Source of the DNA: Mytilus trossulus
Lineage: Eukaryota
Length of the DNA stretch: 64,000 bases
Reading direction: 5' to 3'
Assembly (NCBI RefSeq): GCF_036588685.1
Contig: NC_086382.1
Span: 44,144,001-44,208,000 of the forward strand
The notes beneath the pieces are model-generated. The model did not search any database. It was given only the letters and a program-made list of their open reading frames with translations, and was not told the origin of the DNA. Positions 16,226 to 52,200 of the stretch are shown piece after piece (the stretch's first letter is position 1; each line of letters opens with the position of its first letter). The position numbers and the translations under genes were made by a program.

Positions 16226-16674
16226 CTATGCTATTTTTTCCCTCCACATTAAAAATAGTCGTTCCATTTTGTTCTTAAAACTGGGAAAGTTAACACTTCT
16301 GGTGTCCTCGATGTAATTTACCGACTGAATGGTGCACATATCAACTGACATTTCCTCACCGTCAATAATAAAGGGAATTATTCGGTCCCTTTTCTTTGGG
16401 TCATCTAAAGATTGTATTATATTAGCCTGTTTTCCAAACAGCATCAAATTATCCATAGACATATGTCGAGAATGATAGACAATAACAAGTCTACAATTTA
16501 AGAGGAGACTTGCTAATCCATCGAGGACGGGTGTGCCTGGTGTAATTATATCATCCGGTAAACCAATTGCAAGGTTTGGTACATTGACTTGTTCCAGCAA
16601 ATTTTTGTGGCAAAGTCTTGCAGCCATTTCATCTTCTGAAGCATGTAGGAGTACTGCATCAAACCACTGTTCTC
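16226..16674 (-). CDS. Gene A terminal exon: TIR domain (TICAM/TRIF-TRAM-like)
   Basis: Box1-like FDAVLLHASEDE, BB-loop ITPG, betaC CRLVIVYHS, betaD RIIPF, terminal F..KM.RL; acceptor tgtcttttaaag|GA. Confidence 0.88.
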
Positions 16675-19600
16675 CTTTAAAAGACAAATAATCAACTTAA
16701 CTTTCAATTGAACAAATGCATCTGCGTACAAGCTTTGATACACTCAACATGTGATTCTACATGCATTGTCTTCACTTTGCTCTGTTGTGTTGCATTTTTT
16801 TTGTGTACAATATTATTCTGTTGATCTTTTTTTTAATAGATATAAGAAGATGTGGTGTGAGTGCACATCAAAGTCACAATGTGTACTATAAAATATCAAC
16901 TGAAATTACTTAACACAATTAATTAGTTTCTAGTATCCCTCATGTCTCTAACAGTTTCGCCTATATATCAAGTTCACTGTACTTACTTTGATACAATTGT
17001 GTTGCATTGTGTATCTGTATATAATATAGACATCATATTAAAACAGAAAATTAATAAACACAAGGAAAGCTAGTACGAACCTTTGGTATTATTTTTTTAA
17101 GTAAACTACTGCTTGGGTTTTCAAAGCTTTAAATATCATTTTTACAAAATATTGTTATTTTGATAAGTTTTGTATTTGTTTTTTTTCAAATCTCATTTCA
17201 CAAAAATAAATTACCTCGGCGGCATAACGTGTTAACAGTAATGGTCAAGGAAAGAGAACTTTAATACTTGTCCTAAGTCAGGAATCTGATGTACAGTAGT
17301 TGTCGTTTGTTTATGTAATATATACGTGTTTCTCGTTTCTCGTTTTGTTTATATAGATTAGACCGTTAGTTTTCCCGTTTGAATGGTTTTACAATAGTAA
17401 TTTTGGGGCCCTTTATAGCTTGTTGTTCGGTGTGAGCCAAGGCTCCGTATTGAAGGCCGTACTTTAACCTATAATAGTTTACTTTTTAAATTGTTATTTG
17501 GATGGAGAGTTGTCTCAGTGGCACTCACACCACATCTTCCTATATCTATTTAATAACATTAATCACTTTGTGTACATACCGACAGAACCCCGGTCTTCTT
17601 CCAAATCATTACCGTCTGAAAACAGTGCGAACATCTTTTAAACAAGAATGTTTTGTTTGGTGCTAAGTTTGTTTACATGTGTAATAAAATCTAAATAACA
17701 TACATTTTAGTACTGACATTGGGTTGTCACCATTGTACAAAAGCTTTGCATCCGTATGGTATTATTTTTAATGAGTTTCATTATTGCAAAAATCGAATCA
17801 TCATATAAATATTAATCCAAAAAGCAACAGCTTTTAAAAGCATATTCCTACATTTGATTATGAAACTTTTGAAATGTTTAAGATGATATCTTTTTTTATA
17901 TATTTTCTATTAATAATAAGAGTCTGGAAGTGGAACCTTTTTTGCTATATTCTATACATTTGTTTGTATGACTCTTTCTTTATCCACATTAAAAAATAAT
18001 GCTTATTCTCTTAAATGTTCATGAAAATTATTTTACCACTAGATTCATTTGTTATTACATGATTTCGTCTTTTGGAACATGGTGCCTTACTGTGATTCAT
18101 ATTTTAATGTCTAATTCTTTAGATTATCATAGCTATTTTATTCCTTTCCACTATTCTATATTCTATTCTTTTTACTCACTTTTCATTTCTTTCATTCTTT
18201 TTTTATCAATCATTCCAAATTTTGTAAATCCCGGGATGTCGGTTTATTTTTATTAAACGGGGATATATTTTCCAGACTTAAAATATTTTGTTTTACTTTT
18301 CACTCATATTTCTACATATATCTTTAAACTGGGGTCAAAATGCCGTATAAATAAAACAATCGTAACTTACTCAAACGTGCGTCTTCTACTGAATTATCTT
18401 GCATCAGTTGAGTACTGGTACGACTAGGTAAGTCTGATTGTGACAATGAAGCAGAGGTAGTTGTCAAGCCTAAATAAAATATGTTTTACTTGAAAACAAA
18501 TCTAATATTTACTACAGAACAATAACGTAAATGTACATTTATGACGTATAAACGCATGACATGATAGTCTTCAAATCGAATTAAATTTTTCGTTTCTATA
18601 GAAAATAATCTCTTTATCTTAATGAATTACTTAAGGGTATAATACTTTGCCGATATAATAAGAGAATAAGTTACAAAGGCCTTTGTGCAGTTGGGTTTTA
18701 TTTGTTCCATGTTACCAAAACAATACGTTGCCGATCTAATTAGATAATCAGTCACATATTACAAACGCCTTTCTTCGATTGGTTTGATTAGTTCAGTGTG
18801 GAGTCATTTATTTTCTTGGGTACCAATTTTCGTGAATAAAGGAAAACTTAATTGTTCGTGGATATTTAATTTCGTGGTTTTGCTGATGTCTGCATACAAG
18901 CGCATAGAGAATTTATTATTCGTTGAACATTTAATTTCGTGGTTCATCTGCAGCCACGAAATCCACGAAAATTGGTATCCAACGAATAATAATGAATTCG
19001 TAGTAAATATCTCTGTACCGAAGATTTCGCTAAAATAGGGTATCGGCGAGAAGATAAATTTGGCGCATAAATGTTCATTAGTTCTTCCTATTGTTCGCAG
19101 AAATGTCCTGTGAACCCTTATCACTATCGTTTAAATGTTACACAATCCTTTACATGTACACTTACAAGAGTCTGGAGGTGGAACCTTTATTTCTGTATCC
19201 TCTTCCTTTTTGTGTATGATTCTTTCTTTATCTATAAAAATAATGATTATTCTCTTAAATTATCATAAAAACATTTTTACCATTAGATTCATTTGTTATT
19301 ACATGATTTCTTCTTTCTGAACATGGTGCCTTTCTGTGAGTACTTTATTGTCTTGATTTAGTTTTTCTTAGCTATTAATAGACCACTTTCGAGTTCATCC
19401 GTCACCGGAAAAAACTCGTCAATTATACGCGCCTTTATCATCGTCATTTGTGCGTTTAGGGGCGTCGTCACTTCCTTCCAATGTTGAGCGAGTGGTTGGA
19501 AAACTATAATTCTATATTGTACGAATTATTCGGCAAATTGAATTCTCAAAATTGACAATCAACACTGCTGTCATTAGGGAAATGTCAGTAAGTACCTACA

Positions 19601-21232
19601 GAGCAACCATTATTTCTAGTTTATCCTGCACAAAGACGATCACTAAGACGCTTGATGAACGTAAATAGTGCAGGGATACAGGCGAGCCCCTCTATCTGGT
19701 AAATGACCTCATAAAGGCGTGTATAATTGACGAGTTTTTGCCGGTGACGGATGAACTCGAAAGGGGTCTATTCCTTTGCAACTCCGGAGTATCGTTTTTT
19801 TGTTTTTTTTTCATTTTACTGGAATATATTTTCCGGACGTGATATTTTTATTTTCTTTTCACTCATATTTCTACATATATCTTTAAATTGTGGTTAAAAT
19901 GCCGTATAGATATCGTAGCTTTCTCAAACGTGTTTATTCTTCTGAATTCCCGGGTATGAGTATGAGTTGAACACTGGTACGATTTGGTGAGTCGGATTGT
20001 AACAATGAAGCAGGGGTAGTTGTCAAGCCTAAATAAAATATGCTTTACTTGAAAAAATACTTTACATACTACAGTACAATTAGTTTCATGTCCATGCAGT
20101 ACGTATACACGCATGTCATGGTAGTCTTCAAATTGAATGAAATTTTACGTTTCTATAAAAAAAAAATATTACAAAATTGCGAATGTTCATGTGTTCAAAT
20201 CAACAGTATTAATGGGTCAAACTGGGTTGGATTGTTTTATATAAAAAAATATGTGGTATATTTGCCAATGAGACAACTGTAAACTAGAGACCATTAACAA
20301 CTATAGGTCACCGTACGGCCTTCAACAATGAGCAAAGCCCATATCACATAGTCAGCTATTAAAGGATCCAATAAGACAATGTAAAACAATTCAAACGAGA
20401 AAACTAACGGCCTTATTTATATAAAATGAAAAGAAAGAAAAACAAATATGTAACACATAAACAAACGACAACCTCTGAATTACAAGCTCCTGACTTGGGA
20501 TAGGCACATACATAAATATTGTGGCGGAGTTAAACATTGTATTGATATGTTAAAGTTTAACACGACTTTCGACATTATTGTGCAGTATCGTGGCTGTCTT
20601 TTTTCTATTGGTAGATAATTGGCATAATTGCTCGGAGAGACCAAAAGTTACTGATTTTTGGTAGGAAACCTGACAAGCATAGTCCTTAATTTAAGATTGG
20701 AGTTAAGCGCACCTGCCATGTACGTGCATGATTCGAACACACAACTACTGTGTTGACAGGCTAGTGAAACGGCAGATTGTTACTTGGACCACTTCTAAAC
20801 CGAGTCCACTAAACCAGGAAGGAGGTACTATTCAAACCAATCACTCATTAACGGTACCAATGTGTCTTCAACAGATCTGTATTTAGACAATATCTTTTCA
20901 GAGATGCTAAAATCCGAAATATTCAAAGAACTTTGATGAATAGAAAAGTAGAGCCAAAGGCAAAATGGATATTTCAGTATTGTTTAGATGTGCAAAAGAG
21001 TCCCGATCTCCCTCCTTCAACCTCACCGCCCCCCCCCCCCCCCCCCCCCAAACTCCCAACCCATTCTTCCTCACCCTAAAAAAAAGGAAATATATCGAAG
21101 GCATTCCTTATATATGTACAGCTTGTAATTATATATAAAAAAAATACCTGTTTGTCGTTTAGTCCAGTAATACCCAAACATCCAACAAACTGCAGCTGTT
21201 CCGAAAACAAGGCATACATCTTTTCCACTCAT
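16226..21232 (-). CDS. Gene A: signal-anchor + S/T-rich linker + TICAM-like TIR protein, 222 aa; exons 21232-21148, 18469-18371, 17615-17580, 16674-16226
   Basis: All introns GT-AG and phase 1; 85+99+36+449=669 nt open. Protein begins MSGKDVCLVFGTAAVCWMFGYYWTKRQT-GLTTTSASLSQSDLPSRTSTQLMQDNSVEDARL-NGNDLEEDRGSV-GEQWFDAVLLHASEDEMAA... Architecture mirrors gene B. Confidence 0.8.
17580..17615 (-). CDS. Gene A 36-nt microexon (NGNDLEEDRGSV)
   Basis: ttttcag|...|gtatgt, phase 1-1; peptide motif matches the two gene B microexons. Confidence 0.75.
18371..18469 (-). CDS. Gene A 99-nt Ser/Thr-rich linker exon
   Basis: ttttatttag|...|gtaagt, phase 1-1, open frame; a dead paralogous copy lies at 19924-20028. 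Confidence 0.75.
19381..19768. mobile_element. MITE with ~70-bp TIRs, probable TA TSD
   Basis: GACCACTTTCGAGTTCATCCGTCACCGG... / ...CCGGTGACGGATGAACTCGAAAGGGGTC; absent from the paralogous empty site at ~18131-18150. Confidence 0.82.
19924..20028 (-). pseudogene. Pseudo-exon: duplicate of the gene A 99-nt exon
   Basis: Clearly similar to 18371-18469 including flanks, but has an in-frame TAA (..NSEE*), a 6-nt duplication and a donor changed from GTAAGT to GAAAGC. Confidence 0.75.
21148..21232 (-). CDS. Gene A first coding exon: short hydrophobic signal-anchor followed by basic residues
   Basis: gtttgcag|gctgaacATG...ACAG|gtattt; 85 coding nt, MSGKDVCLVFGTAAVCWMFGYYWTKRQT; same length and phase as the gene B first coding exon. 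Confidence 0.75.
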
Positions 21233-27200: not shown

Positions 27201-27918
27201 TGCAGTATCCCATCAATACGAACTCGTATACTGGGCAAAATATGAAGTGAATTTTTAGGAAATGCAATTACAATTGATCTTAAAGAGATATCAAATTGAG
27301 AATTTTTTGTGATATTTATCTTATGTTTAATTTTGTATAAAATTTGGATTGTATTGATTTCGAATCCAAACTGATGTATCATCTATTGGATAAAGGGTGG
27401 ACTCCATTTAACACAACTGAATTAAAAGAATTAAAAGAATGTAACTTGGGGGTTATACAAAAGTGTAGATTCCTAGCTCCGGCTGAGGGGTTTACTTTTG
27501 GCTTAAGGTTATCATATGAAGGTTAAAAAAAAAAAGATTAAATTAAACTACCGCAAATAAATTTAATGTCTTAAGCACGAAAATTCGTATTATCATGTTA
27601 AAATCAATCAAGAGCTGTGATCGGATACTTTTAATCTTATTAAATTTTTTTTAAATGTTAATTTGAACCTCTCAATTTAGCAACATTTTATTTTATTTAT
27701 TAAGAATATATTAAAACCAAGCACTATATTTGATAATTAACAAGCAAATATCAAAATCAAAGTTAATATTGATGTTGATTCGTCCTCTAGTATTGTTATT
27801 AATGAGTAAATATTTTCAGATTCGAGCGTTGTATATTCCAGGCTCAAGTAATGCAGGTGCAGATTCTCTGTCTCTTTTACGGGTGATCCGTTCCCGTATA
27901 TTTGGACCGGAAGCATTA

Positions 27919-37508: not shown

Positions 37509-37960
37509 TTATCGCAATGTCTTTCTCCAAGAGTCTACTAATTTTTCAAACTTCTCTTTGAAAGTTGGAAACTGACGATGATTTGTGTCATTAACATATT
37601 TTAAATGTATAATTGGGGATAATTCCACTGATATTTTTTCTTCATTCACTTGCAATGGGATTATTCTTTTTGCTTTCTGAGGATCTTCCAGTGACTGAAT
37701 GACATTTATATCTTTCCCATAACCTGCAACTGTATCTGAATCAAGGCTTTTAGTTTGATAGATAAAAACTAGTCTGCATGAGTCTAAGATAGAACTTAGT
37801 CCAGGCAGGAGTTGACTTCCAGGTTCAAACAAATCTTCCGGTAGTGCAACTTGTAGATTTGATATATTTGTAAAATTATTCATTAAGAATGTTTTACACT
37901 TAGTTGCTTCATTCTGGTCTTTTTTCCCGTGTAATAATAAAATGTCATAGCGAAAGATAT
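37509..37960 (-). CDS. Gene B terminal exon: TIR domain (TICAM-like)
   Basis: Acceptor tttatcgttgcag|AT; YDILLLHGKKDQNEA, BB-loop LFEPG, SCRLVFIYQT, KRIIPL. Confidence 0.88.
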
Positions 37961-40900
37961 CTGCAACGATAAAATAAACTTGTTCTATCATAAATAGATA
38001 ACTAGTCCGACAAGTCATAAAAAATCTCAGTAGTATTCTAAAATCGGTCATCAGATCGTAAGCATCTCTAATTCAATTTAAGTCGAAAGCATACGATCTT
38101 GAGATATAGTTTTTAAATATACAGTAAAACCTGTGTAAACCGGCTGGCTACGGGTATATGAAAAAGCAGATGGTTTGGACAGTGGGCTGGTTTATTCAGG
38201 GTTTCTTGTTGACCGGAAGTTAATGACACGCGACGTCCAATATACTGCATGTGAAAGTTTTGTCTGATCATTAATTATAAACTGATAAATATTTCGTATG
38301 ATTGTTGTTTTAAATCGGCTTATTCCATTGGCTATAGAAATTGCTTCTCGAATTCATGAAATAATAGTTTAGCCGTTTGTTACACATCCTCATCTGCCAA
38401 ATAGACCTTGGTAGCATCAGTACTCCACTAGTCAGTTACAACGTATTTACACTTTTGTTATTGAGCTATATATTGCCTCAAAATAACCTTAGATTTACTC
38501 TGAATCATCTTTTGACGTCAGGCAACTATCACTTTTTATTTGTGTCGTCAAATGTTTTTTTTTTTAATTATGATGTAAAAGTTTACGGGATTCTGTGTAA
38601 TTTTACGTCATTACGTATATACGTCTTCGATTGTTCGTCATTAAGTGGGTCACTGGTTTAGGGATTCAAAACAGGGAACCCAGGATTTCGAAAACACGGC
38701 ATCAATTTCTTACTTCGCGATTTGGAAAAAAAATATCCAAGTTACAACGCAAAATCTTTCCGAGATATTTTCGGCGTGTCTGTAACTTTGATTTACACTT
38801 GTAAAGAGTTTTAACAAAACAGCTAACCACTGTACCCTTGTCAGTTCACGGTTTAAGACCTGGTATATAGATTTTCCTTAAAACCCATCTTGTATAAACC
38901 AATATGTTTTGTTGCATATCTATCAATACTGTTATCATTTTTTAAATTAATTAGACAAACCTATTTTGACCGGCAATAATTGATGCTATAAAGAGTATAA
39001 TGACCACACAGTTAGACCACATACCCAGGGGCCGGTTTACAAAGGGTATTCTAACATAGACTATCTAGGGAAAAACAAGGGATCTTAGTTTTCGACTGGA
39101 ATGGACAGATAACCGGTTTATTTAGGGTCCGGTTTACTCAGATTTGACTGTACATAACTTTTCTTGATAGAGGGTTGTTGCTCACTAAGAAGCTTTTTTG
39201 AAAAGTGAGTGTTCCAAATGGTGAAGTTGAAATCATCTCTTCGTAAATTTTACGGACGCCATAACGAGTTGGTTAACCGTAATGGAATAACAGTTTCCCA
39301 AATGATATCGGATATGTTCCTAACGTCATGACTACAATCCCCTTCCCTTTCATAAATGTGACCTACCGAATTAGACTATTTGCCGGATTTGTTATCTCAT
39401 GAACAACACGAAGGATGCCACGTGAGGAGCAGGATCTGCTTACCCTTCCGGAGCACCTGCGATCACCCCTAGTTTTTGGTGGGGTTCGTGTTGTTTATTC
39501 TTAGTTTTCTATGCTGTGTCATGTGTACTATTGTTTGACTGTTTGTCCTTTTCAATTTTAGCGTTGTCATTTTATTTTCGATTTATGAGTTTGACTGTCC
39601 CTCTGGTATCTTTCGTACCTCTTTAATAAATATAAAACGAATGAAAATAAATCAAACACAAAAAAATTGTAAAAAAATAAATATATATCGGAGTGTAAGT
39701 TCAAATAATAAAGGGGATATCATTTTAGAAATTATCTTAACTGTGCCCTGGTTCAAAGATTGAAATTAGGAGGTGGATTAAAAGGACATATAATAAAATA
39801 TTTGTTGATCTTTGGTATATTTTGATTCATTGATTCATCAAGCCAAGATATATGACAATCAAGGTCGTTCCCTAGTGAATATCATATGTATGGGGTTGGT
39901 TACAAACTCATCAAAAGTCAAAATTGAGAAATTAACGTGGTTATTTTACTCCATTGACGTCATACAATAAGCAGTAAAATCACCTGGATACTTTGTAGAA
40001 AATGTAAAAACAATTTTAAAATTATTAACAAAGGTACCAGGATTATAATTTAGTCCGCCAGACGAGCGTTTCGTCTACATAAGCGTTTCGTCTACATAAT
40101 AAGATTAACGGTACCAGTTTTCTTGCAACAGATGCGCATTTCGACAATACATGTCTCTTCAGTGATGCTCGTTGCCAAAATATTTGAAATCCAAAGCTTA
40201 TATAAAAGATAAAGAGCTATAATCCAAAAGGTTCAAAAAGTATAGCCAAATCCGTGAAAGGAATCAGAGCTTTGCAAGAGGGAGATACATTCCTTAATTT
40301 ATAATAATTTCTATCATTTGGTAACAGCAAATTTTAATAACACAAAAAAATCCGTATTTTCATGCCAGTACCGAAGTACTGGCTACTGGGCTGGTGATAC
40401 CCTCGGGGACTAATAGTCCACCAGCAGAGGCATCGACCCAGTGGTAGTAATAAGATTAACGGTACCAATTTTCTTGCAACAGATGCGCATTTCGACAATA
40501 CATGTCTCTTCAGTGATGCTCGTTGCCAAAATATTTGAAATCCAAAGCTTATATAAAAGATAAAGAGCTATAATCCAAAAGGTCCAAAAAGTATAGCCAA
40601 ATCCGTGAAAGGAATCAGAGCTTTGCAAGAGGGAGATACATTCCTTAATTCATAATAATTTCTATCATTTGGTAACAGCAAATTTTAATAACACAAAAAA
40701 ATCCGTATTTTCATGCCAGTACCGAAGTACTGGCTACTGGGCTGGTGATACCCTCGGGGACTAATAGTCCACCAGCAGAGGCATCGACCCAGTGGTAGTA
40801 ATAAGATTAACGGTACCAATTTTCTAATGCATAAGACGCATCAGTGACGCTTATATCAAAATATTTATAAAGCCAAACAAGTACGAAGTTGAAGAGCAAT

Positions 40901-43900
40901 GAGTATCAAAAATTCCAAAAAAGTTGTGCCAAATCATATGAAAATCAAAATACCATTCTGAAAAGTAGTATACTTAGTCTTACAAAAAGCTACCAGAAGT
41001 TGAAAACGCTATTCTAACTAATAGACCATCCTTTATATATCTCTGACTACAATATAAATCAGTACACTTCTAAACAATTTAGGGTGCAGAGGTCATAGGT
41101 AGAACTTGACCTTGTGTACTGAAACATATAAAACTACCAAACAAGAAAACCCCAGACTAAATATGCGACTCGTTATCTTTGCATTGTTGTCGTCATGAAA
41201 ATCGTGATTGAAACTACAGACATGGGTAAAGGGAGCGAGGTGTAACATAATCAATTGAGTATAATTGAATGAGCCACTTTTATACCTAGCGCTCTGTCTT
41301 CCTCCACATCAAGTGGACCTGTTTAATAGAAAAAACACATATTGTGATTATTAATAAAATTGAGAATGGAAATGGGGAATGTGTCAAAGAGACAACAACC
41401 CGACCAAAATAAAAAAACACAACAGCAGAAGGTCACCAACAGGTCTTCAATGTAGCGAGAAATTCCCGCACCCGGAGGCGTCCTTCAGCTGGCCCCTAAA
41501 CAAATATATACTAGTTCAGTGATAATGAACGCCATACTAATTTCCAAATTGTACACAAGAAACTAAAATTTAAATATCACTTGTTTAAATGATAATTATG
41601 TCGAACTAATGTTTTAGGATGTTATTCAAAAGCAAAGATAAAGTTTTTTGTCCTAGTCAGACATGACAAAACATGCATGACAGAAGATATTTATTTAGTC
41701 AGCTCTGAATTTGACCTAGTTCTATTCAGACTGTGTTCCCTTAATTATCGTCTGTTTGTACATGCTTTATGATGAACTATTCAAAATACTAGTAGCATTG
41801 ATTATACAAAAATGAACAATAATATATCGATAAGGTCGAACAGAAGTTGTTTAGTATCAAAATATCAATAAAGGAAAATCTCTTTGATCAATCTGCACGG
41901 TCATATGCATGTATGGTAATACATTCGATGCCATTAAAACTTAAAAACTAGATATGACATGTCACTGATAACAAAGTAAATTCGGTTAAGAGAAGATCAT
42001 CAGCTGAATTGATGTAAAACATAAAACACACATAAAACAGTTAACAGAATGAACTTACATGAAGTCAATTAAAATATTTCCCGCCCAAATCCATTAGAAA
42101 ATGGAGATGCAAGATACCAAAAGGATGTTGAAACTATTATACGTTTCAGACAAACGGACATCGATAAGGGAGATAAAAACTAAAAATTACGAAAGTCTAC
42201 AAAAACACAACACAGACAAGCGTTAAATACATGTTCGTTAGTTGATTTGTACAACACCGCTTTGATTTGATCAATGTGGACCATTTGCTTTCATTAACCG
42301 TTGAATGTTCCTGATTATCTATGATCATTTTCATTATGATTAGTATTATAAGCAAGAATATATCGCTTCAAATAAAAAAAAAATGAAATGTCCTTGGAAT
42401 TACATTACGAAAGTAGAAAATTTAATGTGACCCATTTATACCTATAGGTCTGTCTTCTTCTATATCATCTTGACCTGTACAACAGAAAAAACAATAAATG
42501 TTACGTTTTCAAATAATTTAAGATTGGGTTAACAGTTTTGGGTCATTATTCCAAAACTATGTTCCAAATAAGGTATTGTATTGTCAGTCGATTTTTCAAT
42601 AGTTATTTTTGTAGCTATTTGGTGTGATCTAAGGCTCCGTGTTGAAGACCGTACTTTTTCCTATATTGGTTTACTTTTACAATTTAAGAGCTGGATGGAG
42701 ATGTATCTTATTGACACCCATTCTACGTCTTTATATTTCTATTTGCAAAATACGTAATAAATGCAAATTCGATACAATTAAACTGAATATGCAGTCTATA
42801 TACACTTTGTAGAAATTGCACATGAAATACGAATTGAAATCACTCTTGATACGAATATAAAGCATATACGCAGATAAAAAAGATGAACCTTTTATCGAAA
42901 AAATATAGAAAGATATACTTACTGCTTTGAGCTAAAGGTGTGTTCGATTCCACAGAAAAAATATTTGCATCGATATTTTAATATATATGTCTGTACATAT
43001 CATGTATATTAGTAAATTAACACATATATCAAGCTTCGTCATGTGCATTAGTACTCCCCACATGTGCTTTATCCTGTTATAATCCATAGTATTACAGAAT
43101 AATTTCACGTTTTGTTCAATCAATAATTTGCAATTCAAATTATAACTATCATTTTTCTCAAACAAATATCTAGTTTTGAAGTTCAAATCATCACTTTTTG
43201 GTCAGTGACAGTATATGCCATAGTAATTGTGTATTATTCAGTGATTGAAACAAAATTTTACTTAGACTATACTAAAAGATATTGACAGAACAATTGTGAA
43301 AAATTATCAACAAAAACAAAAAGAAACAGATGAACTTGTACCTACTCGATGATATACTACATTAGGTACTTTTTTGATAGTTGTCTCGTAGACCTTTTAG
43401 TCGGTTCTTCTAATAATGTAAATAAATTAAATGGGATTTCATTTTCACTTTCAATTAATGTACACACTTTGTTGCGGTATTTTTCTACGTTGATTGGATA
43501 TACTTAATATTAAATGTCTTCCTTTAAATGCCACTTTATATGACAGAAATATTATGAAATATTATAATTTTTCAAAAAAGGAACATAACAGTATTTGTTC
43601 CTTATAGCATAAAGGGTTTCGAAAATTTGTTCAATTAGAAACAGGTAGTATAGTTTTGTTTATTCAAGAGGAACTTCAGTTAGAGGGATCAATTAAACAC
43701 TGCATCTGTCTAAACCGTAGTAAATCAAATATAAAATCAAACCTCCTTAAATTTTAAGAATTATATCTCATATAATGTTAGCAAGGCTCTTTTAATTCTG
43801 TTTTTTAAATTTGTATTCTCTCAATTTTTGTGTTCAATAATTTAAAGATACATGATAATAAATGTTGTTTTTTTTCACGGTATCTTATTCGAACGGTGCT

Positions 43901-46900
43901 CTAATAAGATACCGTGAAATTTTCATCGGTCAGCGCCTACCGACAATATTCAAAGTTATGCGGCTTAATAGTACGAACCTCCTTATACAATAAGCTTCAA
44001 TGACTAAAGTGTGTTCTCGGCAATATTGATACATATGTAGAGACGAGAAAACAAACAAATTGTATTACAACAGTGACGATCTATAATTTATAGATGTATG
44101 TCTGTTTTTGAAATAATTATCTTCATTAAAGACAAATGTTATTGTTATTATACATGCTACATCACTAATTTATACATTGATGCAATTCGTGTTTACTGTA
44201 GGCATGTCAATCTAATATATTTAACTGTTTAACTGATGCGTTATTACGCTAAGAAGAATAGGTTTTACCTTCAACTGGAATTTCTTCATGAGTACTTGAT
44301 TCTATCTTTCTGCCTATCCGTGGAGTTTCTTCTGTAAGACTGTCAATCTAAAACAAATTAAAAACAATTACAGGAAAATACAATACGAAATTAATCTGTC
44401 TTACGTTATCACAAACATTGAAAACAGCATGTATAAATGAAATGCGCTCGAAGGGCTTTTCTGGATGTATTTTCATTCGGAACGCTCCCAGCCGTATATT
44501 TGAACGCCAAGGATGTATAAAACAGAAACTGTTGAAGAGCTTTACAATGAAAAAATGACATAAGATAATAGCCAACTCATTCTAAAGATAATTTTGTCCG
44601 GGGAAGTACAAACCTTTATTTAAAAGATTCATTCATATCAAAAAGGGGTTCTTTTTTTCAATGTCTAGTTAATTATAAACACAGTCTTTTTTTCAAAGTG
44701 CTTTAATCTTTCATATAATTTTCAAAATGTAGATTCAACTCGTATGTAAACACGGACAATAAAGGGTCTGATATGCATTCAGTAAAAAACATATCTATTG
44801 TCTGAGACTGTATGTTCCATTCAGATATCTTTTGGGTTTTTTTTTGTTTTGTTTTGTTTAATTTATACATTGGCGGCACTCTTTAATCGTATCTACTTCA
44901 TCATTATAATTACATCCATTTATTTTTTTGCGTAGAGACCATTCTATACACGTACGACATATGGTATTTCGTTTCGTCAGATATATGTTCCTGTTTATTG
45001 GAACAGTCGATTCAAACTAGCAAATATCAATCATGTGCCATTTAAATGTTGTTTTTCATGAAATTTCAAGGTGATAAGATCTAAATCCTTTTTATTTTTT
45101 TTTGTTGTTCAGACTTTTTCTTAAAGTACGATATTATACGTTCAAAAATGTTACTGGGAAAACTCAATAATAAAACAATGTTTATCAGTCCTTTAAACTA
45201 TGTGCTGTACCTTCAATGATATTTTATAAACTTCGTCTTTCATAAATTGTTCTAAGCTGTCGCATTTCTCTTTTAGTAATTTTAGCTGGGATTCAAGACT
45301 GGCGTTGTAGTGGATGTTCAATTTTCTTGATCTTTCATGTATATTTGCACCTTCTTTCTTCAAGGATGTCATGATTTCTTCGAATTTTCTTTCTAACGCT
45401 TTTTTGTCATCTGTCTCAGCTTTGCCTAGTTCATTTTGATGTGTTTGTATTACTTCTAATTTATCTGTAACGGTCTTCTCGTATTTGGTATGTTCTTCTA
45501 GTTTATCCGCTATGAGGCTAGTTTGTTTTGCGTCTTGATATTGCTTTTCTTCCATTCGTTTTATATGCGCATCCAGTGCTTGTAATTGTTTCAATTGGGC
45601 TATGATATAAAACAAGAAAAGATCATACCTACGCTAACGTCAAAAGGTAAGCTAGCTATAACACAAGGTTTAATTAACCATTTTCTGCATATAAAAACGC
45701 CTGAACCAAGTCAGAAAAATGACATTTATTGTCCCTTCGTTTGATATAAATAAACTCATCATAGGTTCCAAAGACTCAATTTTATATATACACCAGAAGC
45801 TCGCTTCGTCTACAAAAGACTCATCAGTGACGCTCGAATCCAAAAATGATTAAAATACAAACCCAATTTAAGTACGAAGTTGAAGAGCATTTAGATGTGT
45901 TTGAGCGTTTGATTTATATTAGGGTCTTACCGTTTTCCTCCGAGTTCAGTTTTTTGTGATTTTACTTTTGTCTTAAAAGAGAACTATTTCGATGTACTAA
46001 GTACTTATTTTTTTTAAATAAATTTATTTTGTTTAATTGGTTGATTTATCTTGTCCTTCATTCATATAAAAAAAATTAAGGTGATTTGGTAAGATTATTA
46101 ATAAGATAACTATAAAAAAAATCTGATATAAATCATAAGATCCTGTGACGGCTCTTGAATTTTACGATTTAGGATTCTAACAAAACCCTTATCTTTTTTT
46201 CTGTTCTGTCAACACCAACTAATAATCTTCCAACTTCTATATTTGGAAAGTTATGTACTGCTAAGACAATACCAAAGGATCCTGAGAGGTCTTTATAACA
46301 AGGAAAGTACGGAGCGTTGTAAGATCTATACTAGTAATACGTGGACATATGATCTGTATTTCAATCAGATGAGTCAGTCGATATGGAGCATTATTGATCA
46401 ATCAACCGAAACTATTCAACAATGCAATAAACGTATTACTATGGAACACCACAGCTGTCTTATGTGGAACTCTGATATTACTTTATGTTGTTTTATTATT
46501 ACTTAATGATATTTGTCTTTCCTTAATATGGTTTTGACATTACGTAATGGTGTTTAAATATAACTCAATATATAATAGCCATTGTTTGATGCTATTTCGA
46601 TATTACACGATCATATTGTTTTGTATTGACTTCATATAGTTTTGTCATTACTCGTTGTGGTTTCACCATTATTTAAAATGGTTGTGTCATTAGTCAATGT
46701 GGTTTCAACATTACTTGATGTGTATGTGACTTAACGTAATGTAGTTGTTTCATTACATGATTTTTTCCGAATTGGTCACGTTGTTTTACCTCATCAAGTA
46801 ATGGGATAACCACATCAAAGAATGACAGGACCACATCTAAGAATGACAAGACCACATCAAATAATGACACAAACATATCAAGAAGTGTAAAAGCGTCAAA

Positions 46901-49900
46901 TTTTGAAACATCATTACGTAATGTTAAAACCATATAAAGAATAGACAAATCATCATAACGAAATAAAAAAAAAAATCAGGTAATGAAACAACTACATTGC
47001 GTTCAGTCACATACACATCAAGTAATGTTGAAACCACATTGACTAATGACACAACCATATCAAATAGTGGTGAAACCACATCGAGTAATGACAAAACTAT
47101 ATTAAGTCAATACGAAACCATGTCGTGTAATATCGAAATAGCATTAAGTAATTTTTATTCCATATTGAGTTATATAAAAACATCATTACGTAATGTCAAA
47201 ACCATATTAAGTAAAGACAAAATATCATTAAGTAATAATAAAACAGCATAAAGCAATATCCGAGTTCCACATAAGACAGCTGTGGCGTTCCATATATTCC
47301 ATACAATTAAAAGTGGATAATTATACAAGATGTCTTACACACTGCTTACATTCAGTGTAGCATAAGTTATCCTCGTGCTAATTTTTAAGAAATATGCCAA
47401 ATTGTATCATAAACTATAAATAAGTAGCGTTGTGTACCCTTTTACATGCATTTAGCAAGTATAAAGAGAAATGCATTGTTGTTTTTTTTTCTCTAAGACG
47501 AGATTTCGACATTTTCATGTGATATTGTTGCGTAAAAAGTAAAATCACAAAAATAATGAACTCAGAGGAAAATCAAATCGGAAAGTCCCTAGTCACATGG
47601 CAAAATCAAATGAAAAAACGCATCAAACACGAATGGACAACTTCATATTCCTGACTTGGTACAGGCATTTTCAAATGTAAAACGTGGTGGACACCTAATT
47701 AAAAACACTTTTATTGCTTTGCGTCTCTGACGTCAGAAAATCTATACGTCACATAGGAATAAATTTTGTCGTTCGATATTTACAAAACAATTTTTAAATT
47801 TTACATGGTCAATATCAATGTTGGCATACAGGGTTTATAAATCTAAATGTGATAGAATAAATTTCAGAAATAGACCGAGATTTAAAATAGTCTAAAAGTT
47901 CTATAGAATAAATAAGAATCCACAAATTGTTAATTACACTACGCGATTAATTAGTTTTGACGTTTTTTGTTCAACGTATTTTCTAATATATAATAGAAGT
48001 ATTATAACATTATGACTTACTATACAACAATAACACACTGGCGAGATAGTGTAGATAAATCAATGGTCTTTATATAATCTATGAGAACAACCAAGATTGC
48101 AATACTTTTTCGAATATTTAGACATCCACATATGTTTTATTCTACTTAGTGGGAGATATTATGGACATAATTGTGCAAATCGTGATACAAGCATGAAATT
48201 TGGTATAAAGGTTAACTAAATGATACTTATACAAAATCCGCTGCTGGCCAGAAAAAAAACCCAAATTTTTCAAAATGGCCACCACACATTTTTGAAATGG
48301 CGTCATTTCAAATTGGCAATACTTCGTTAATACTTTGAAAGGTGTGATATATGTAAAATTCAAAGTTAGATTCGATAAAAAGTAAATGACAGTTCCTTAA
48401 TTACGACAAGACAATACATTACTGAAACTAAAGGTGACTTCCGGTTTCAAAATGCTGTCAAAATGGTCAAAAATTTCAATTTTTGTACTTTCAAGCAACT
48501 TCACATGGGATATAAACATGATAAATCATTAAAAAATTGTTTTAGGTATAATCCAATGTAAGTTATGATAAAACATTGAAAACAATTTCTAAGTACGACA
48601 AACAACAAATAAATGAAGAAAATAGTGATTTCCGGTTCCAAAATGGAGGCAGATACGGAAAAAATATTTTTATAATTTCCATCAACTTAACAAGAGATAA
48701 CACTCTTTTGTTAAGTTTAAATGCCTAGTTTTGTTAGAAAGACAGGTTGCTTATCTTATAATTATCTGACAGCAGTCAATAAAAAAACCCGTACAAGGAA
48801 GAAAAGACAGGTAGCATGTACAGTTACCAACAGTTACACAGCTGGATTTTTTCGCCTCCGCATTTCAAAAGTTCCCAACAGGAGGATGCAACTTAAACGG
48901 CAGCCGAAGAAGTAATTTTAGGGTTTTCAACTGTCATCGATATTTTTTTCTTTCATACAAACCCAGTGTTCACGAGTCAGTACATGTACCTGTCAAATAC
49001 ATAAATCAGGCTGAGCCCAAACTTGTCCTCCTTGATATGCTTCTTTATGGATGTGCTCCGAAAAAAAAACTCTTGAAGGCGGAACTATATCTCGATTCCA
49101 CTGATTCCTGGGTAACAATTAATATCGTGCCTCGTTGACAGCAAATGTTGACGTTGTTCTGTCATACTTTACTCATACATGATGCAAACAAATGATTCTA
49201 TGATGTCCATGTATGTGTCGTCTTTATACTTCAGCAAAAAAACGCCCCATACATCTTGAAATACTTCACATGTCATCCAAACTGACCTATTCCCTTTCCC
49301 ACGAAAATCCGACAAAGTTTCACATCTACTGAATAAATGAACGAAAGAAAGAGTAGCTACACGAGGACCAAACGCATTTGATATGTCATGTACATGAAAC
49401 CATCAAAAGTCTTCATTCCTGCCAAAACCAATCCACAGTTTGTTCCACCGTATTTTTGTAGTGCTGCTATTCTGAATTCTTCTACATCTGTGTCGGTGAT
49501 ACCTCAAATTACCGTCTTACAACAATTTTCATAATCATACCGAACATGGACAAACATTCTTATATCTGCTTCTCCATGCTTAAAAGGGATAGCGGGAAAG
49601 TATCATTATTAGTCTCTAAAGAAGCAATTATGTCGGCAAGAAACTTGAAAAATTTAGAAAACATATAACACAATGTGTACTCTTGAATACTTATCAATGC
49701 AAGATTTTATGTAAGGCAGTTTGCCACATTTGCAAAATCATCAAATATTGTTGCCTAACAAGGTGGCCTGGAATTAACCATTGCTGCCCTTCAACGATAA
49801 ATGCGTCAGAATTTGGATATGCAAATTGCAAAATGTTTTAAGTTTATCCATTTGCACCGATTTTATATCACTGTTTAAAATGACATCTTTAGACAAACGA

Positions 49901-52200
49901 GGAGCACTTTGTCTTTATGGATTAAAAGATATTCCAAGTCAATATGTCCACTGCGACAAAAAATACAAGTCTAGAAAATACATCGCAATCACTCTTAAGG
50001 TTCTCTAGCTTTGTTTTTTGACAAAATTTTACAATTTTGTTTTACAGACATAATAGAAATTTGTTCTTTTTTATCTGGTTATAAGAAACAGGTTCTCTTT
50101 TGTTTTTCATTTGCTTCTAACGATCTTCGTATTGTTTGCCTTTGATCTTTTGAAAGAAATCCTTTTGTGTTTATTAAGTCGTTCATCTGTTATAGAATGC
50201 CTCAAACCACTAGATCTTGCAAGTTCATCTGATAGTCTACTGACTTCTTGTCCAGCTACCATCAATACGTCTAAATGGGGTTTTCTTTTAAACATATGAC
50301 AACAACATCGCCCTTCACAATTGCATTATTCTGGGATTTATTTTTGCTTTATATGGACTGCATGTGCAAAATCTGACTCATAAAATGAGCATACTACCAC
50401 ATTTCCAAGAAGTTCTTATTCTATAATTGAACGCCAGGAATTAAACTGTGGTCGAGATGACTATATTTTCTTACACCAGTCTACCAAATCATTGAACGTC
50501 ACAGAGTCCTGGCGTGATCATAATTTCTGTATTTAGCTTTCTTTAGCCAATATTTATCATTCAATCTAACACACAGAGTTATCTGATGCGCGTGTCTAGT
50601 CCTAGATACATTTGAACATATACATACAAAGAATATGCCGTTCTCGGTGTTGCAATATGGGTTTTTGTGAGAATATATGTCCATCTATTATCACGTAATA
50701 AATCACCCAGAATTTTATAACAAGTCATTTCAATGTGCAATCCACCTCACATGACGATTAACTTATCTTCTCTGGACAAATCAGGCCATTCCCACTGAAT
50801 AACCATGATTACTAAAAGTGGCTGATCTGCCGTTACTATTGATGTTTCTCTCGTATAAACCACATTTTCCGCCTTATCCATCGAATACTTGATCTTTGCA
50901 ACTGAATAGGCTTGTTGCTAAAAAGTGGCATCATAGATTTTACACTTACTTGAACAGCTCTACAAGAGCCTTCGTTTGAGTAATGATATGAACTGCGATT
51001 TATACCAGTTTGCCCTGGTAGTACATACAAATCGCTCATTATGTCTATAAATAGGTTGCACATGCGCAAAATTGTCAAATCATATTTATCATAACCTTGG
51101 AAAATGTTATCAAACCAAATCATGATATAATTGAAAAGCCCAAAACATTTATTTTATAGTAAATAGTTACAATGTTTTTTAATGAATTTTGTTACATTTC
51201 GCGCATGAGCAAACCCTTCAGATGTCAAACATTCATGTCTCGTGAATTCTTACATGTAAGGAAGGCAGCTACCAAACCTGATAGCTGTTTTTCACTTAAA
51301 GAAGGTAAACGAAAAATTTCAAGAAAAAAATCAGTATTTTCTAGCTGAAAAAAACTACCATTTTAGAAAAAGGCCGTGGCCATCTTGAAAAAAATAATTT
51401 TTTTAATGACCAGCAGTTGTTCCTTAAAAAGTATATAATAATGATGCTTTGTGGAAATATCTATGATTGTATCATCATTTGCACAATTCCCTTGATTTTG
51501 CCTGCTAATATCTTCCACTAACTTTGCAACTAATGATTTCAATGAATACCTGTTATACAAACAATCTAACTCCTCGTATGTGTTGCTCAATGAAATATCC
51601 AATAAGATTTGCCGAAATCCCTATCTTACCAAGATACATCGGCTAACATGAACGAGAATTTATTACAAATACAGATATCCATACCTCTTTGCTGTAGTGC
51701 CTGGACAAACAGCTTCATATGGGGGTCTCATTGGAGGGTTCTGATCCCGGATCCCGCTTACTGTTTTGTCAGATTCCCGTATCCTGCTTACACTATGTAA
51801 GTAAGCAATTATCTTTTTTTTTGTAATTTCCTGGGTCCCGCCAGACTTCATTTCCCGTTTTCAAGCACAATAATTTGTATTTCACGTGTCCCGCTTACAA
51901 AAAATCGGCAATCCCGCGTGACGCTAAGACCCCAATGAGACCCACTCATATTTGAGGTTTTGAAATAAGTAAGAGATGAATGCAGTGTGCATACCACAAA
52001 CGTCTCATTGGCTGATGGATACTTCAGAAAAAATCAGTAAGGGTTACTTACGATAATAATGCAACGGCTTTGGTGATATGCTTAATTCTTGGAACAAATG
52101 TTATAATATCCTTACCCGACTGTACTCTGAACAGTTTATACGAAATTCCACATCCAAGTAATACGCCGCCTAACACACAAACAGAATCCCTTATATTCAT
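37509..52200 (-). CDS. Gene B: signal-anchor + coiled coil + acidic linker + TICAM-like TIR protein, 356 aa; exons 52200-52116, 45599-45211, 44347-44269, 42474-42442, 41318-41286, 37960-37509
   Basis: All GT-AG; intron phases 1,0,1,1,1 are consistent; 85+389+79+33+33+452=1071 nt open. TIR exon is an obvious paralogue of gene A (LLLHGKKDQ, FEPG, CRLVFIY, IQSLEDP.K..RIIP, FPTFKEK). Confidence 0.78.
38122..39150. mobile_element. Tc1/pogo-like non-autonomous element
   Basis: ta|CAGTAAAACCTGTGTAAACCGG ... CCGGTTTACTCAGATTTGACTG|ta. Confidence 0.7.
40097..40825 (-). mobile_element. Tandem hammerhead retrozyme, family 2 (351-nt unit, 2 copies), inserted in a family-1 copy (~40030-40935)
   Basis: aagattaacggtacc recurs at 40101, 40452 and 40803; minus-strand gcatca-CTGAAGA-gac..gtc-GAAA-tgcgca-TC at ~40125-40170 and ~40476-40521. 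Confidence 0.82.
41286..41318 (-). CDS. Gene B 33-nt microexon (GPLDVEEDRAL)
   Basis: attaaacag|...|gtataa, phase 1-1; homologous with flanks to 42442-42474. Confidence 0.72.
   Translation of the reverse strand, partial: VHLMWRKTER
42442..42474 (-). CDS. Gene B 33-nt microexon (GQDDIEEDRPI)
   Basis: ttgtacag|...|gtataa, phase 1-1. Confidence 0.72.
44269..44347 (-). CDS. Gene B 79-nt linker exon (IDSLTEETPRIGRKIESSTHEEIPVE)
   Basis: ttgttttag|...GAAG|gtaaaa; phase 0 to 1, exactly bridging the coiled-coil exon and the microexons. Confidence 0.75.
45211..45599 (-). CDS. Gene B coiled-coil exon (~130 aa)
   Basis: Inside ORF 45193-45615; E/K/Q/L-rich, no Pro, heptad-like; acceptor ttttatatcatag|CC, donor AAG|gtacag. 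Confidence 0.8.
46440..47294. mobile_element. Foldback element: ~310-bp inverted arms built from ~21-bp subrepeats
   Basis: tatggaacaccacagctgtcttatgtggaactc... / ...gagttccacataagacagctgtggcgttccata; internal accacatc.a.gaatgaca repeats. Confidence 0.8.
48147..51520 (-). mobile_element. Academ (XPG-type) DNA transposon remnant in an intron of gene B
   Basis: TIRs TAGTGGGAGATATT.../...AATATCTTCCACTA with long degenerate extension, 3-bp TSD ACT. Minus-strand remnants: HGEADIRMFVH (~49545-49580), TDTDV, FVHLFSRCET...FRGK (XPG/PIN-like), and a Cys-rich C-terminus (LLKCG...CVTVGNCTC...LPCT, ~48790-48870). Confidence 0.8.
51721..51947. mobile_element. Short MITE
   Basis: TIR gggtctcattgg / ccaatgagaccc. 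Confidence 0.6.
52116..52200 (-). CDS. Gene B first coding exon: signal-anchor-like segment
   Basis: tttttgcaacag|tgcccaaccATG...TCGG|gtaagg; MNIRDSVCVLGGVLLGCGISYKLFRVQS; 85 coding nt, phase 1, same as gene A. Confidence 0.7.

What the first reader, a model, noticed from the sequence alone, without database searches (positions are those of the whole stretch)
16226..52200. Tandem pair of membrane-anchored TICAM-like TIR genes: a candidate organelle-anchored innate-immune adaptor system
Seen: two paralogous spliced genes, not visible as wholes in the ORF track, share an 85-nt phase-1 first coding exon encoding a short hydrophobic segment, acidic DxEEDR microexon(s), and a single-exon C-terminal TIR; gene B adds a ~130-aa coiled coil. 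Established: TLR and IL-1R receptors have ectodomains, MyD88 has a death domain, TRAM is myristoylated, SARM1 is ARM-SAM-TIR and MAVS is C-terminally anchored. An N-anchor-(coiled coil)-TIR layout with no ectodomain matches none of these. Inference: a short/long adaptor pair (functionally reminiscent of TRAM/TRIF or a sorting + signalling pair) assembling on an intracellular membrane. Bivalves have many poorly characterised cytosolic TIR families, so it may belong to an already catalogued but unstudied one.
Basis: partly seen in the sequence, partly recalled or inferred. Interest (0 to 1): 0.9.

Follow-up and report, generated by a model that had tools for sequence, protein, structure and literature searches.

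The report
Tandem membrane-anchored TRAM/TRIF-like TIR genes
Two neighbouring mussel genes each encode a short N-terminal hydrophobic anchor, an acidic linker and a C-terminal TIR domain whose closest known relatives are the vertebrate adaptors TRAM and TRIF; the genes are real and belong to an uncharacterised family found across bivalves, but their function, location in the cell and true kinship to TRAM/TRIF remain inferred.

Summary
Two minus-strand spliced genes lie in tandem. Each has an 85-nt first coding exon that ends in phase 1 and encodes a 16-19-residue uncharged segment. Each also has 33-36-nt microexons encoding D-[LIV]-E-E-D-R and a single C-terminal TIR exon. The two TIR exons are 39% identical. 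Gene B adds about 155 helical residues.

Gene models from four Mytilus species, and 1-2 kb contigs carrying whole reading frames, show the same layout starting at the same Met.

The TIR is TICAM-like. A Mytilus-only profile hit only TRAM and TRIF in the PDB. It found 88 proteins among 1.84 billion; every named one that I looked up was a mollusc protein or vertebrate TICAM1, except one unnamed fish protein that scores as TRIF. A broader bivalve profile scores TRAM 54.7 bits, TRIF 40.9 and MyD88 39.9. A vertebrate TRIF profile prefers these TIRs to the mussel's own TLR TIRs.

The anchor-linker-TIR layout recurs across Bivalvia, including the protobranch Solemya.

Not shown: TICAM orthology (no TRIF-NTD, RHIM or myristoylation site), membrane insertion, organelle, or an A/B partnership. 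In this assembly one gene B exon carries an in-frame stop, and two duplicated gene A exons are decayed. No RNA reads could be obtained.

Verdict: a new variant of a known kind, of moderate interest.

The parts
21148..21232 (-). Gene A first coding exon, 85 nt, phase 0 to 1. Met, then a 19-residue uncharged Gly/aromatic-rich segment, then T-K-R.
   Evidence: orthologues P0003/P0004 map here at 93-97% identity
19924..20028 (-). Gene A cassette exon copy a (S/T/P-rich), decayed: in-frame TAA and donor GT changed to GA.
19166..19231 (-). Gene A cassette exon (KER...EEDTEIKVPPPDS), 66 nt, phase 1-1, AG/GT intact.
18371..18469 (-). Gene A cassette exon copy b (S/T/P-rich), 99 nt, phase 1-1, AG/GT intact.
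17918..17983 (-). Gene A second copy of the 66-nt cassette exon, decayed: no AG, no GT, in-frame stop.
17580..17615 (-). Gene A acidic microexon, 36 nt, phase 1-1, encodes G-N-D-L-E-E-D-R-G-S-V.
16226..16674 (-). Gene A TIR exon (148 codons plus TAG), entered in phase 1 after the acceptor ttttaaag.
52116..52200 (-). Gene B first coding exon, 85 nt, phase 0 to 1. Met, then a 16-residue uncharged Gly-rich segment, then K-L-F-R.
45211..45599 (-). Gene B helical (coiled-coil-like) exon, 389 nt, phase 1 to 0, 129 full codons.
44269..44347 (-). Gene B exon continuing the second long helix, 79 nt, phase 0 to 1.
43346..43409 (-). Gene B Ser-rich linker exon. It has an in-frame stop with either usable acceptor (43409 or 43393) in this assembly; the orthologues read Gln there.
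42442..42474 (-). Gene B acidic microexon 1, 33 nt, phase 1-1 (Q-D-D-I-E-E-D-R-P-I).
41286..41318 (-). Gene B acidic microexon 2, 33 nt, phase 1-1 (P-L-D-V-E-E-D-R-A-L).
37509..37960 (-). Gene B TIR exon (149 codons plus TAA), entered in phase 1 after the acceptor tcgttgcag.

Best explanation
The region holds a conserved tandem pair of paralogous genes from a bivalve-wide family of TIR-domain proteins. In that family the TIR is the C-terminal domain. It is preceded by a disordered acidic linker and, at the extreme N-terminus, by a single moderately hydrophobic helix. Most likely mechanism (inferred): the N-terminal helix acts as an uncleaved signal anchor. It has a 5-residue stub outside and basic residues on its C-terminal side, so the rest of the protein faces the cytosol and the TIR is tethered to a membrane surface. 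There the TIR acts as a scaffold or adaptor through TIR-TIR contacts with TLRs or other TIR proteins, in the way the myristoylated adaptor TRAM does in vertebrates. It is probably not an NAD-cleaving enzyme. Gene B inserts two helices of about 90 residues each between anchor and linker; these would act as a spacer or an oligomerising stalk. The acidic [LIV]-E-x-D motif sits on phase 1-1 cassette microexons, so its copy number can be changed by splicing without breaking the frame. It is probably a short linear docking or processing motif. Shown: the gene structures, the paralogy, the TIR fold, the preferential similarity to TICAM TIRs, and the recurrence of the layout across bivalves. Inferred: membrane insertion and topology, adaptor function, and the role of the motif.
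For: Exon anatomy and splice phases. Models from other Mytilus species start at the same Met and carry anchor, linker and TIR: M. galloprovincialis P0003; M. edulis P0004 (RefSeq-style 'isoform X2'); M. coruscus P0006, P0011 and P0012; and the RefSeq XP_ models M. californianus P0007, P0015 and P0101. P0005 is a complete 205-aa reading frame on a 2,073-nt contig, whereas gene A spans 5 kb here, which argues for a spliced transcript. M. californianus isoforms X1 and X2 differ by exactly one DLEEDR microexon. The tandem order looks conserved: the A-type and B-type proteins share a contig size in three species, and the LOC numbers are 127724252 and 127724240. TIR fold: AF2 pLDDT 86.5; the top Foldseek hit is the human TRAM TIR. 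TICAM-likeness. The BB-loop P-G is invariant or nearly invariant. The N-terminal uncharged runs are 16-20 residues with a net-positive C-flank in A, B and distant members from oyster, ark clam, soft-shell clam and Solemya. The AF2 model of orthologue P0015 has helix 3-92, helix 95-185, a disordered stretch 187-224 that holds the motif, and TIR 229-372. The motif is present in 9 of 44 cluster representatives against 1.0 expected from shuffles.
Against: Hydrophobicity is marginal for a transmembrane helix: the summed biological-scale free energy is +1.4 to +2.2 kcal/mol for A and +3.2 to +3.7 for B (scale values from memory, no position weighting). TRIF and MyD88 score alike against the broad profile (40.9 and 39.9 bits), and Foldseek ranks MyD88, TLR1 and MAL just behind TRAM. 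The TICAM signal therefore rests mainly on TRAM and on what the large-library search did and did not find. The sequences in the tree were chosen by the profile itself, and the tree leaves TRIF in a polytomy. Gene B's Ser-rich exon, present in all orthologous long models, has a stop here. The coiled-coil dimer job gave no verdict.
Confidence: 0.6

Rival explanations
1. Gene B, and possibly the whole pair in this haplotype, is decaying. The Ser-rich exon 43393-43346 is constitutive, so its TAA truncates the protein before the TIR or triggers nonsense-mediated decay. Only gene A would then be functional here.
For: There is an in-frame stop with both usable acceptors. The equivalent exon is present in every long orthologous model: P0014, P0015 and P0101. 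Gene A also carries two decayed duplicate exons. The helical exon has 4-aa and 3-aa deletions and a 1-aa insertion relative to the orthologues.
Against: The B TIR exon, both microexons, E1, E2 and E3 are all open with intact AG/GT. The flanking exons are phase-compatible, so skipping this exon keeps the frame. M. coruscus models P0011 and P0012 join the anchor to the TIR with only a short linker. The B TIR is 89% identical to M. galloprovincialis P0009.
Confidence: 0.3
2. The TICAM-likeness is convergent or reflects a shared ancestral state. On this view the family is one more lineage-specific bivalve TIR-DC family with no special relation to TRAM/TRIF, and its partners and outputs are unrelated to TICAM signalling.
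For: Identity to TRAM is only about 20%. MyD88 scores as well as TRIF. There is no TRIF-NTD, RHIM or myristoylation signal. The tree is unresolved at the base. The literature places the origin of TICAM in chordates (PMC9440496, PMC9334734).
Against: The Mytilus-only profile hits only TICAM2 and TICAM1 in the whole PDB at E up to 10. Among 88 hits in 1.84 billion proteins, 8 carry TRIF-NTD and only 1 carries a death domain. Human TRAM (54.7 bits) outscores every one of the mussel's own TLR TIRs tested (at most 38.8 bits). The reciprocal TRIF profile scores A at 47.0 and B at 36.2 bits, against at most 29.4 for those TLR TIRs.
Confidence: 0.4
3. The proteins are membrane-tethered TIR enzymes (NAD+ hydrolases or cyclases, as in SARM1 or TIR-STING) rather than scaffolds.
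For: Many distant family members carry Glu in a ...Y-Q-x-E-[IM]-A-L... helix that resembles the catalytic-Glu context of SARM1 and plant TIRs (the resemblance is from memory). A bivalve STING-TIR protein is among the weak hits.
Against: In that alignment column gene A has Gln and gene B has Asp. The best PDB relatives are non-enzymatic adaptors.
Confidence: 0.1
4. The N-terminal hydrophobic exon is a cleaved signal peptide, or is not a membrane segment at all (for example an amphipathic or lipid-droplet hairpin), so the TIR is not displayed on a cytosolic membrane face by a transmembrane anchor.
For: Hydrophobicity is marginal and the segment is Gly-rich. AF2 confidence for residues 1-20 of P0015 is 50-62.
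Against: The uncharged run is 16-20 residues with no small-x-small cleavage context, and basic residues follow it. A lumenal or secreted TIR would have no known partner. The property is conserved while the sequence is not, across distant bivalves.
Confidence: 0.1

Closest known systems
TICAM2 / TRAM (vertebrates)
   Same: It is the best PDB match by profile (E 7.9e-14, 54.7 bits; the top hit, with only TRIF behind it, for the Mytilus-only profile) and the top Foldseek hit. Like gene A, it is a short protein with a C-terminal TIR held at a membrane by its N-terminus (established knowledge).
   Different: TRAM is tethered by N-myristoylation plus a polybasic patch. Here there is no Met-Gly start (MSGK and MNIR) but a hydrophobic helix. 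Identity is about 20%. There are no data on TLR4-like partners. Orthology is not shown.
TICAM1 / TRIF (vertebrates)
   Same: TRIF TIRs are among the 88 library hits. A TRIF TIR profile scores these TIRs above the mussel's TLR TIRs.
   Different: There is no TRIF-NTD and no RHIM. The TIR is C-terminal, not central. The PDB score of TRIF equals that of MyD88.
Amphioxus bbtTICAM (Yang et al. 2011, cited in PMC9440496)
   Same: It is regarded as the earliest TICAM-like adaptor, and an invertebrate TICAM relative is the concept at stake here.
   Different: It was not compared here, because no sequence was available through the tools.
Bivalve cytosolic TIR-DC families (Gerdol et al. 2017, cited in PMC10279657 and PMC6321704)
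   Same: That work catalogued a large, mostly uncharacterised repertoire of bivalve TIR proteins, and this family very probably lies within it. Philipp et al. 2012 (PMC3308963) noted 'one weak hit for TRAM' in M. edulis.
   Different: The 2017 paper is not held in the library. I could not check whether an anchor-linker-TIR, TICAM-like family is named there.
Hydra HyTRR-1/2 (TM-TIR proteins without LRRs; PDB 4w8g/4w8h)
   Same: They are membrane proteins with a TIR and no recognisable sensing ectodomain. They appear among the fold hits.
   Different: HyTRRs are receptor-type (type I, TLR-like TIR) proteins. Here the anchor is at the extreme N-terminus with a 5-residue stub, and the TIR is adaptor-like.
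Tom20-type signal anchors and MAVS (organelle-anchored platforms)
   Same: The segments share the rule published for mitochondrial outer-membrane signal anchors: a short N-terminal stub, moderate hydrophobicity and basic residues within about 5 residues after the segment (the rule is from memory: Kanaji et al. 2000).
   Different: The same features fit ER or plasma-membrane type III anchors. MAVS is tail-anchored and CARD-based. No localisation data exist.

Membership tests
TIR domain superfamily | Flavodoxin-like beta-alpha TIR fold | tested here: met
   AF2 pLDDT 86.5, pTM 0.82. There are 36 Foldseek PDB hits at E <= 1e-3, nearly all of them TIR domains.
TIR domain superfamily | Pfam TIR/TIR_2 score above the gathering cut-off | tested here: not met
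   TIR_2 scores 22.8 bits (A) and 19.7 bits (B) against a cut-off of 28. PF01582 does not match. These are divergent TIRs that standard models recognise only weakly.
TIR domain superfamily | Conserved BB-loop Pro-Gly | tested here: met
   P46 is nearly invariant and G47 invariant in the Mytilus alignment. They align to the P-[HC]-G of TRAM.
TICAM (TRIF/TRAM) family | TIR closer to TICAM TIRs than to other TIR families | tested here: met
   The margin is clear for TRAM (+15 bits over MyD88) but nil for TRIF against MyD88.
TICAM (TRIF/TRAM) family | Monophyly with TICAM1/2 in a TIR phylogeny | tested here: inconclusive
   In the quick IQ-TREE of 122 TIRs, TRIF falls with the mollusc families opposite the mussel TLR TIRs (SH-aLRT 98) but in a polytomy. 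The ingroup was chosen by the profile, and no MyD88, TIRAP, SARM1 or amphioxus TICAM sequences were included.
TICAM (TRIF/TRAM) family | TRIF N-terminal domain and RHIM (TRIF) | tested here: not met
   No Pfam hit in the window exons I scanned (the two TIR exons and the long helical exon) or in the family members scanned. TRIF-NTD is found only in the 8 vertebrate hits.
TICAM (TRIF/TRAM) family | N-myristoylation signal Met-Gly-x-x-x-Ser/Thr (TRAM) | tested here: not met
   The N-termini read MSGKD... and MNIRD....
TICAM (TRIF/TRAM) family | Couples TLRs to TRAF3/TBK1/IRF or NF-kB | not testable with these tools
   Needs co-IP and reporter assays.
N-terminal signal-anchored membrane proteins | Uncharged hydrophobic run of TM length at the N-terminus, more positive on the C-terminal side | tested here: met
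   A: 19 residues, flanks +1/+2. B: 16 residues, flanks +1/+2. The same pattern is seen in 14 further family members.
N-terminal signal-anchored membrane proteins | Hydrophobicity sufficient for membrane integration | tested here: inconclusive
   KD 17-residue mean is 1.6. The summed biological-scale free energy is +1.4 to +3.7 kcal/mol. No dedicated TM predictor was available.
TIR NADases (SARM1-like) | Catalytic Glu in the alpha-C helix | tested here: not met
   The alignment column has Gln (A) and Asp (B), while distant relatives have Glu. That this column equals SARM1 E642 is inferred by pattern and not by superposition.
Bivalve TIR-DC catalogue (Gerdol 2017) | Listed as a named family with this architecture | not tested
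   The paper is not held.

The most novel reading that the evidence does not exclude
Molluscs possess genuine TICAM homologues. These would form a superfamily comprising an N-terminally membrane-anchored, C-terminal-TIR branch (this pair and its relatives across Bivalvia, including Protobranchia) and a second branch with an N-terminal TIR and a long tail (Mercenaria, Mytilus, Dreissena, Haliotis). That would place the origin of the TRAM/TRIF lineage before the protostome-deuterostome split. The bivalve anchored forms would be the functional counterpart of TRAM, tethered by a helix instead of a lipid and tuned by alternatively spliced [LIV]-E-x-D microexons. Those microexons could be initiator-caspase-type cleavage sites that release the TIR, or di-acidic D-x-E export or docking signals.
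Probability: 0.3. Interest if true: 0.75.

Novelty: new variant of a known kind. Interest (0 to 1): 0.5.

Why it matters
Reviews and surveys state that TRIF and TRAM arose in chordates, and that molluscs lack a MyD88-independent adaptor or use unknown TIR proteins instead (PMC9334734, PMC9440496, PMC3308963). A bivalve-wide TIR family whose nearest relatives are TRAM and TRIF gives concrete candidates for that missing role. The layout of anchor, spliceable acidic motif and TIR suggests direct experiments on localisation, TLR binding, NF-kB/IRF reporters and cleavage. It also shows that standard Pfam TIR models under-detect this family, so it is easily missed in immune-gene censuses.

Tried and rejected
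- Coiled-coil self-association of the gene B helical exon (2 copies): score 0.01, no verdict. This is evidence neither for nor against binding.
- A weak TIR-like tblastn hit at 14703-14587 was not confirmed by the family HMM over all window reading frames. Only the two TIR exons score.
- ESM Atlas look-ups gave only generic TIR hits and a TICAM2 cluster below 0.9, which are leads only.
- The Gerdol 2017 catalogue could not be read. Searches for 'TRIF-like' or 'TICAM-like' in bivalves found nothing relevant.
- Spliced full-length window proteins were not assembled or searched. Full-length architecture was read from database orthologues (P0003-P0007, P0014, P0015, P0101).
- A pLxIS-type IRF3-docking motif in gene B's Ser-rich exon was considered and rejected. 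That exon and its orthologues read S-I-S-S without the required Leu.
Full report
**What is in the sequence**

On the minus strand there are two open TIR-type exons, 16226-16687 and 37509-38051. They are 39% identical over 145 residues, E 1e-41. Pfam sees them only below threshold: TIR_2 scores 22.8 and 19.7 bits against a cut-off of 28. A family HMM run over every reading frame of the window finds only these two TIR exons.

**Gene A (16226-21232)**

- The first coding exon is 21232-21148. It is 85 nt, its ATG lies 7 nt after a polypyrimidine-AG, and its donor is gtattt. It encodes Met-Ser-Gly-Lys-Asp, a 19-residue uncharged run, then Thr-Lys-Arg.
- Orthologous proteins map onto further phase 1-1 exons:
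  - an S/T/P-rich exon present twice: 20028-19924, decayed (in-frame TAA, donor GA), and 18469-18371, intact;
  - a 66-nt exon present twice: 19231-19166, intact, and 17983-17918, decayed;
  - the acidic microexon 17615-17580, which encodes NDLEEDR.
- The TIR exon starts at 16674.
- Every internal exon is phase 1-1, so any subset splices in frame.

**Gene B (37509-52200)**

- E1 is 52200-52116. It is 85 nt and encodes Met-Asn-Ile-Arg-Asp, a 16-residue Gly-rich uncharged run, then Lys-Leu-Phe-Arg.
- The helical exon is 45599-45211 (389 nt, phase 1 to 0), followed by 44347-44269 (79 nt, phase 0 to 1).
- The Ser-rich exon ends at 43346. It reads through a TAA with either usable acceptor in this assembly; the orthologues have Gln at that codon.
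- There are two 33-nt microexons, 42474-42442 and 41318-41286, encoding DDIEEDR and LDVEEDR.
- The TIR exon starts at 37960.

**Are the models real?**

The evidence is comparative.

- Independent annotations start at the same Met and join the anchor exon to the TIR: M. galloprovincialis P0003; M. edulis P0004; M. coruscus P0006, P0011 and P0012; and the M. californianus RefSeq models P0007, P0015 and P0101. P0014 (M. edulis) has anchor, coiled coil and microexons but breaks off inside the TIR.
- P0005 is a complete 205-aa anchor-linker-TIR reading frame on a 2,073-nt Logan contig. Gene A spans 5 kb here, so that contig must lack the introns.
- Similar complete frames sit on 1-2.7 kb contigs for distant members: P0019, P0027, P0029, P0033 and P0061.
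- None of these extends upstream into an ectodomain.
- M. californianus isoforms X1 (385 aa) and X2 (374 aa) differ by exactly one DLEEDR microexon.
- The A-type and B-type proteins share a contig size in three species, and have LOC numbers twelve apart in M. californianus. This is consistent with a conserved tandem pair.

**What kind of TIR is it?**

- An AF2 model of the A exon is confident (pLDDT 86.5) and is a TIR fold. The top Foldseek PDB hit is the human TRAM TIR, followed closely by MyD88, TLR1/5 and MAL.
- A profile made only of Mytilus sequences hits TICAM2 (E 9e-5) and TICAM1 (E 0.02) and no other TIR at E up to 10 in the PDB; the only further match, at E 0.83, is a non-TIR chain.
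- The same profile, run against 1.84 billion representative proteins, finds only 88 at E <= 1e-3.
  - Eight of these carry the TRIF N-terminal domain. One carries a death domain.
  - I looked up 30 clusters. The named ones are bivalves from across the class (Mytilus, Saccostrea, Tegillarca, Potamilus, Sinanodonta, Mercenaria, Mactra, Mya, Ruditapes, Dreissena, Solemya), vertebrate TICAM1, and one unnamed fish protein (Lucifuga, P0059) that scores as TRIF.
- A broader 44-sequence bivalve profile gives TRAM 54.7 bits (E 7.9e-14), TRIF 40.9, MyD88 39.9 and TLR3 28.
- An HMM I built from the same alignment scores the mussel's own TLR TIRs at no more than 38.8 bits, and the eight family exons in this genome at 75-188 bits.
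- Reciprocally, an HMM of vertebrate TRIF TIRs scores A at 47.0 and B at 36.2 bits, against at most 29.4 for those TLR TIRs.
- A quick tree puts TRIF with the mollusc families, opposite the TLR TIRs, but in a polytomy. Its ingroup was selected by the profile, so it is not a test of orthology.
- Another clade in that polytomy has an N-terminal TIR and a long tail. It is also molluscan and includes a gastropod.
- My reading is that 'TICAM-like' is justified as a statement of similarity, clearly for TRAM. Membership of the TICAM family is not shown: TRIF-NTD, RHIM and a myristoylation signal are absent.

**The anchor**

- Both E1 exons encode a 5-residue stub, an uncharged Gly/aromatic-rich run of 16-19 residues, and basic residues within 1-4 positions after it.
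- The same property, without sequence conservation, is found at the N-terminus of many distant members from oyster, ark clam, soft-shell clam, Solemya and unnamed transcripts.
- The charge balance predicts a cytosolic C-terminus, which a TIR domain requires.
- Hydrophobicity is only moderate (KD mean about 1.6; summed free energy +1.4 to +3.7 kcal/mol). Together with the basic flank, this fits the published rule for Tom20-type mitochondrial outer-membrane signal anchors (from memory). It fits a weak ER or plasma-membrane type III anchor just as well. The organelle is therefore open.

**The linker and the helices**

- The AF2 model of the M. californianus B orthologue has one helix from residue 3 to 92 (the anchor runs straight into it) and a second helix from 95 to 185. 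A disordered stretch, 187-224, holds the acidic motif. The TIR is 229-372.
- The motif [DN]-[LIVCM]-[ED]-x-D occurs within 60 residues upstream of the TIR in 9 of 44 cluster representatives, against 1.0 expected from shuffled linkers. Examples are DIETD, DVETD, DVEPD, DCEED and DIEED in non-Mytilus members.
- The motif resembles both an initiator-caspase site ([LIV]-E-x-D) and a di-acidic D-x-E export signal. Both readings are speculation from memory.

**Enzyme or scaffold?**

In the alignment column where many distant members have Glu, within a ...Y-Q-x-E-[IM]-A-L... helix, gene A has Gln and gene B has Asp. This favours a scaffold role for this pair. That the column corresponds to the SARM1 catalytic Glu is inferred, not tested.

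**State of the locus in this assembly**

Gene A has a complete set of intact exons. Gene B needs its Ser-rich exon to be skipped in order to reach its TIR. Every long orthologous model includes that exon, so a disabled B allele is a real possibility (about 0.3). All other B exons are intact.

**Comparison and novelty**

The accessible literature says that bivalves have many uncharacterised cytosolic TIR-DC proteins (PMC10279657) and that TRIF/TRAM orthologues are absent from molluscs (PMC9334734, PMC3308963). The second of these papers noted one weak TRAM hit in M. edulis. I found no description of an anchored, TICAM-like family, but the key catalogue (Gerdol 2017) could not be read. I rate this a new variant of a known kind (a TIR adaptor), of moderate interest. 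The genes and the family are solid. The mechanism, the A/B partnership and the organelle are unproven.

Noticed in passing
window 19924-20028 and 17918-17983 (minus strand): An internal tandem duplication of two cassette exons in gene A. In each pair one copy is intact and the other decayed (stop plus lost splice sites), in alternating order along the gene.
   Followed up: partly
window 43346-43409 (minus strand): Gene B's Ser-rich exon has an in-frame TAA where orthologues read Gln. It also has a 2-nt length difference near its 5' end relative to M. edulis P0014. This could be an allele-specific knockout or an obligatorily skipped exon.
   Followed up: partly
G000 C11:14601698-14602141, C11:14869645-14870076, C3:87550207-87550653, C6:4013477-4013836, C6:11853817-11854239, C6:15253933-15254367 (L003-L008): Six further TIR exons of the same family lie elsewhere in this genome. 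L006 has an internal TAA. L007 is near-identical to a 711-aa M. trossulus RefSeq protein, misnamed 'hybrid signal transduction histidine kinase M-like', that also starts with a hydrophobic anchor.
   Followed up: partly
proteins P0023, P0025, P0026, P0028, P0029, P0033, P0034 (alignment A3): Distant bivalve members of the family keep a Glu in a Y-Q-x-E-[IM]-A-L helix that resembles the catalytic-Glu context of TIR NADases. The Mytilus A and B types have lost it.
   Followed up: no
proteins P0070-P0097 clade; P0095 and relatives P0121-P0137: A second molluscan TICAM-like TIR family has the TIR near the N-terminus and a long tail of 400-900 aa (Mercenaria, Mytilus, Dreissena, Haliotis). Its nearest Atlas cluster is vertebrate TICAM2 (0.89).
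   Followed up: partly
window 30761-31312 (minus) and 4655-5290 (plus): Two long ORFs of 183 and 211 aa have no Pfam match. The first lies between the two TIR genes and is Cys/Lys-rich. Their nature is unknown.
   Followed up: partly
G000 genome-wide: At least 150 PF01582 TIR matches, mostly in 700-900-aa open frames (intronless TLR genes), many in tandem clusters, for example C9:65.1-65.3 Mb and C4:23.9-24.0 Mb.
   Followed up: no
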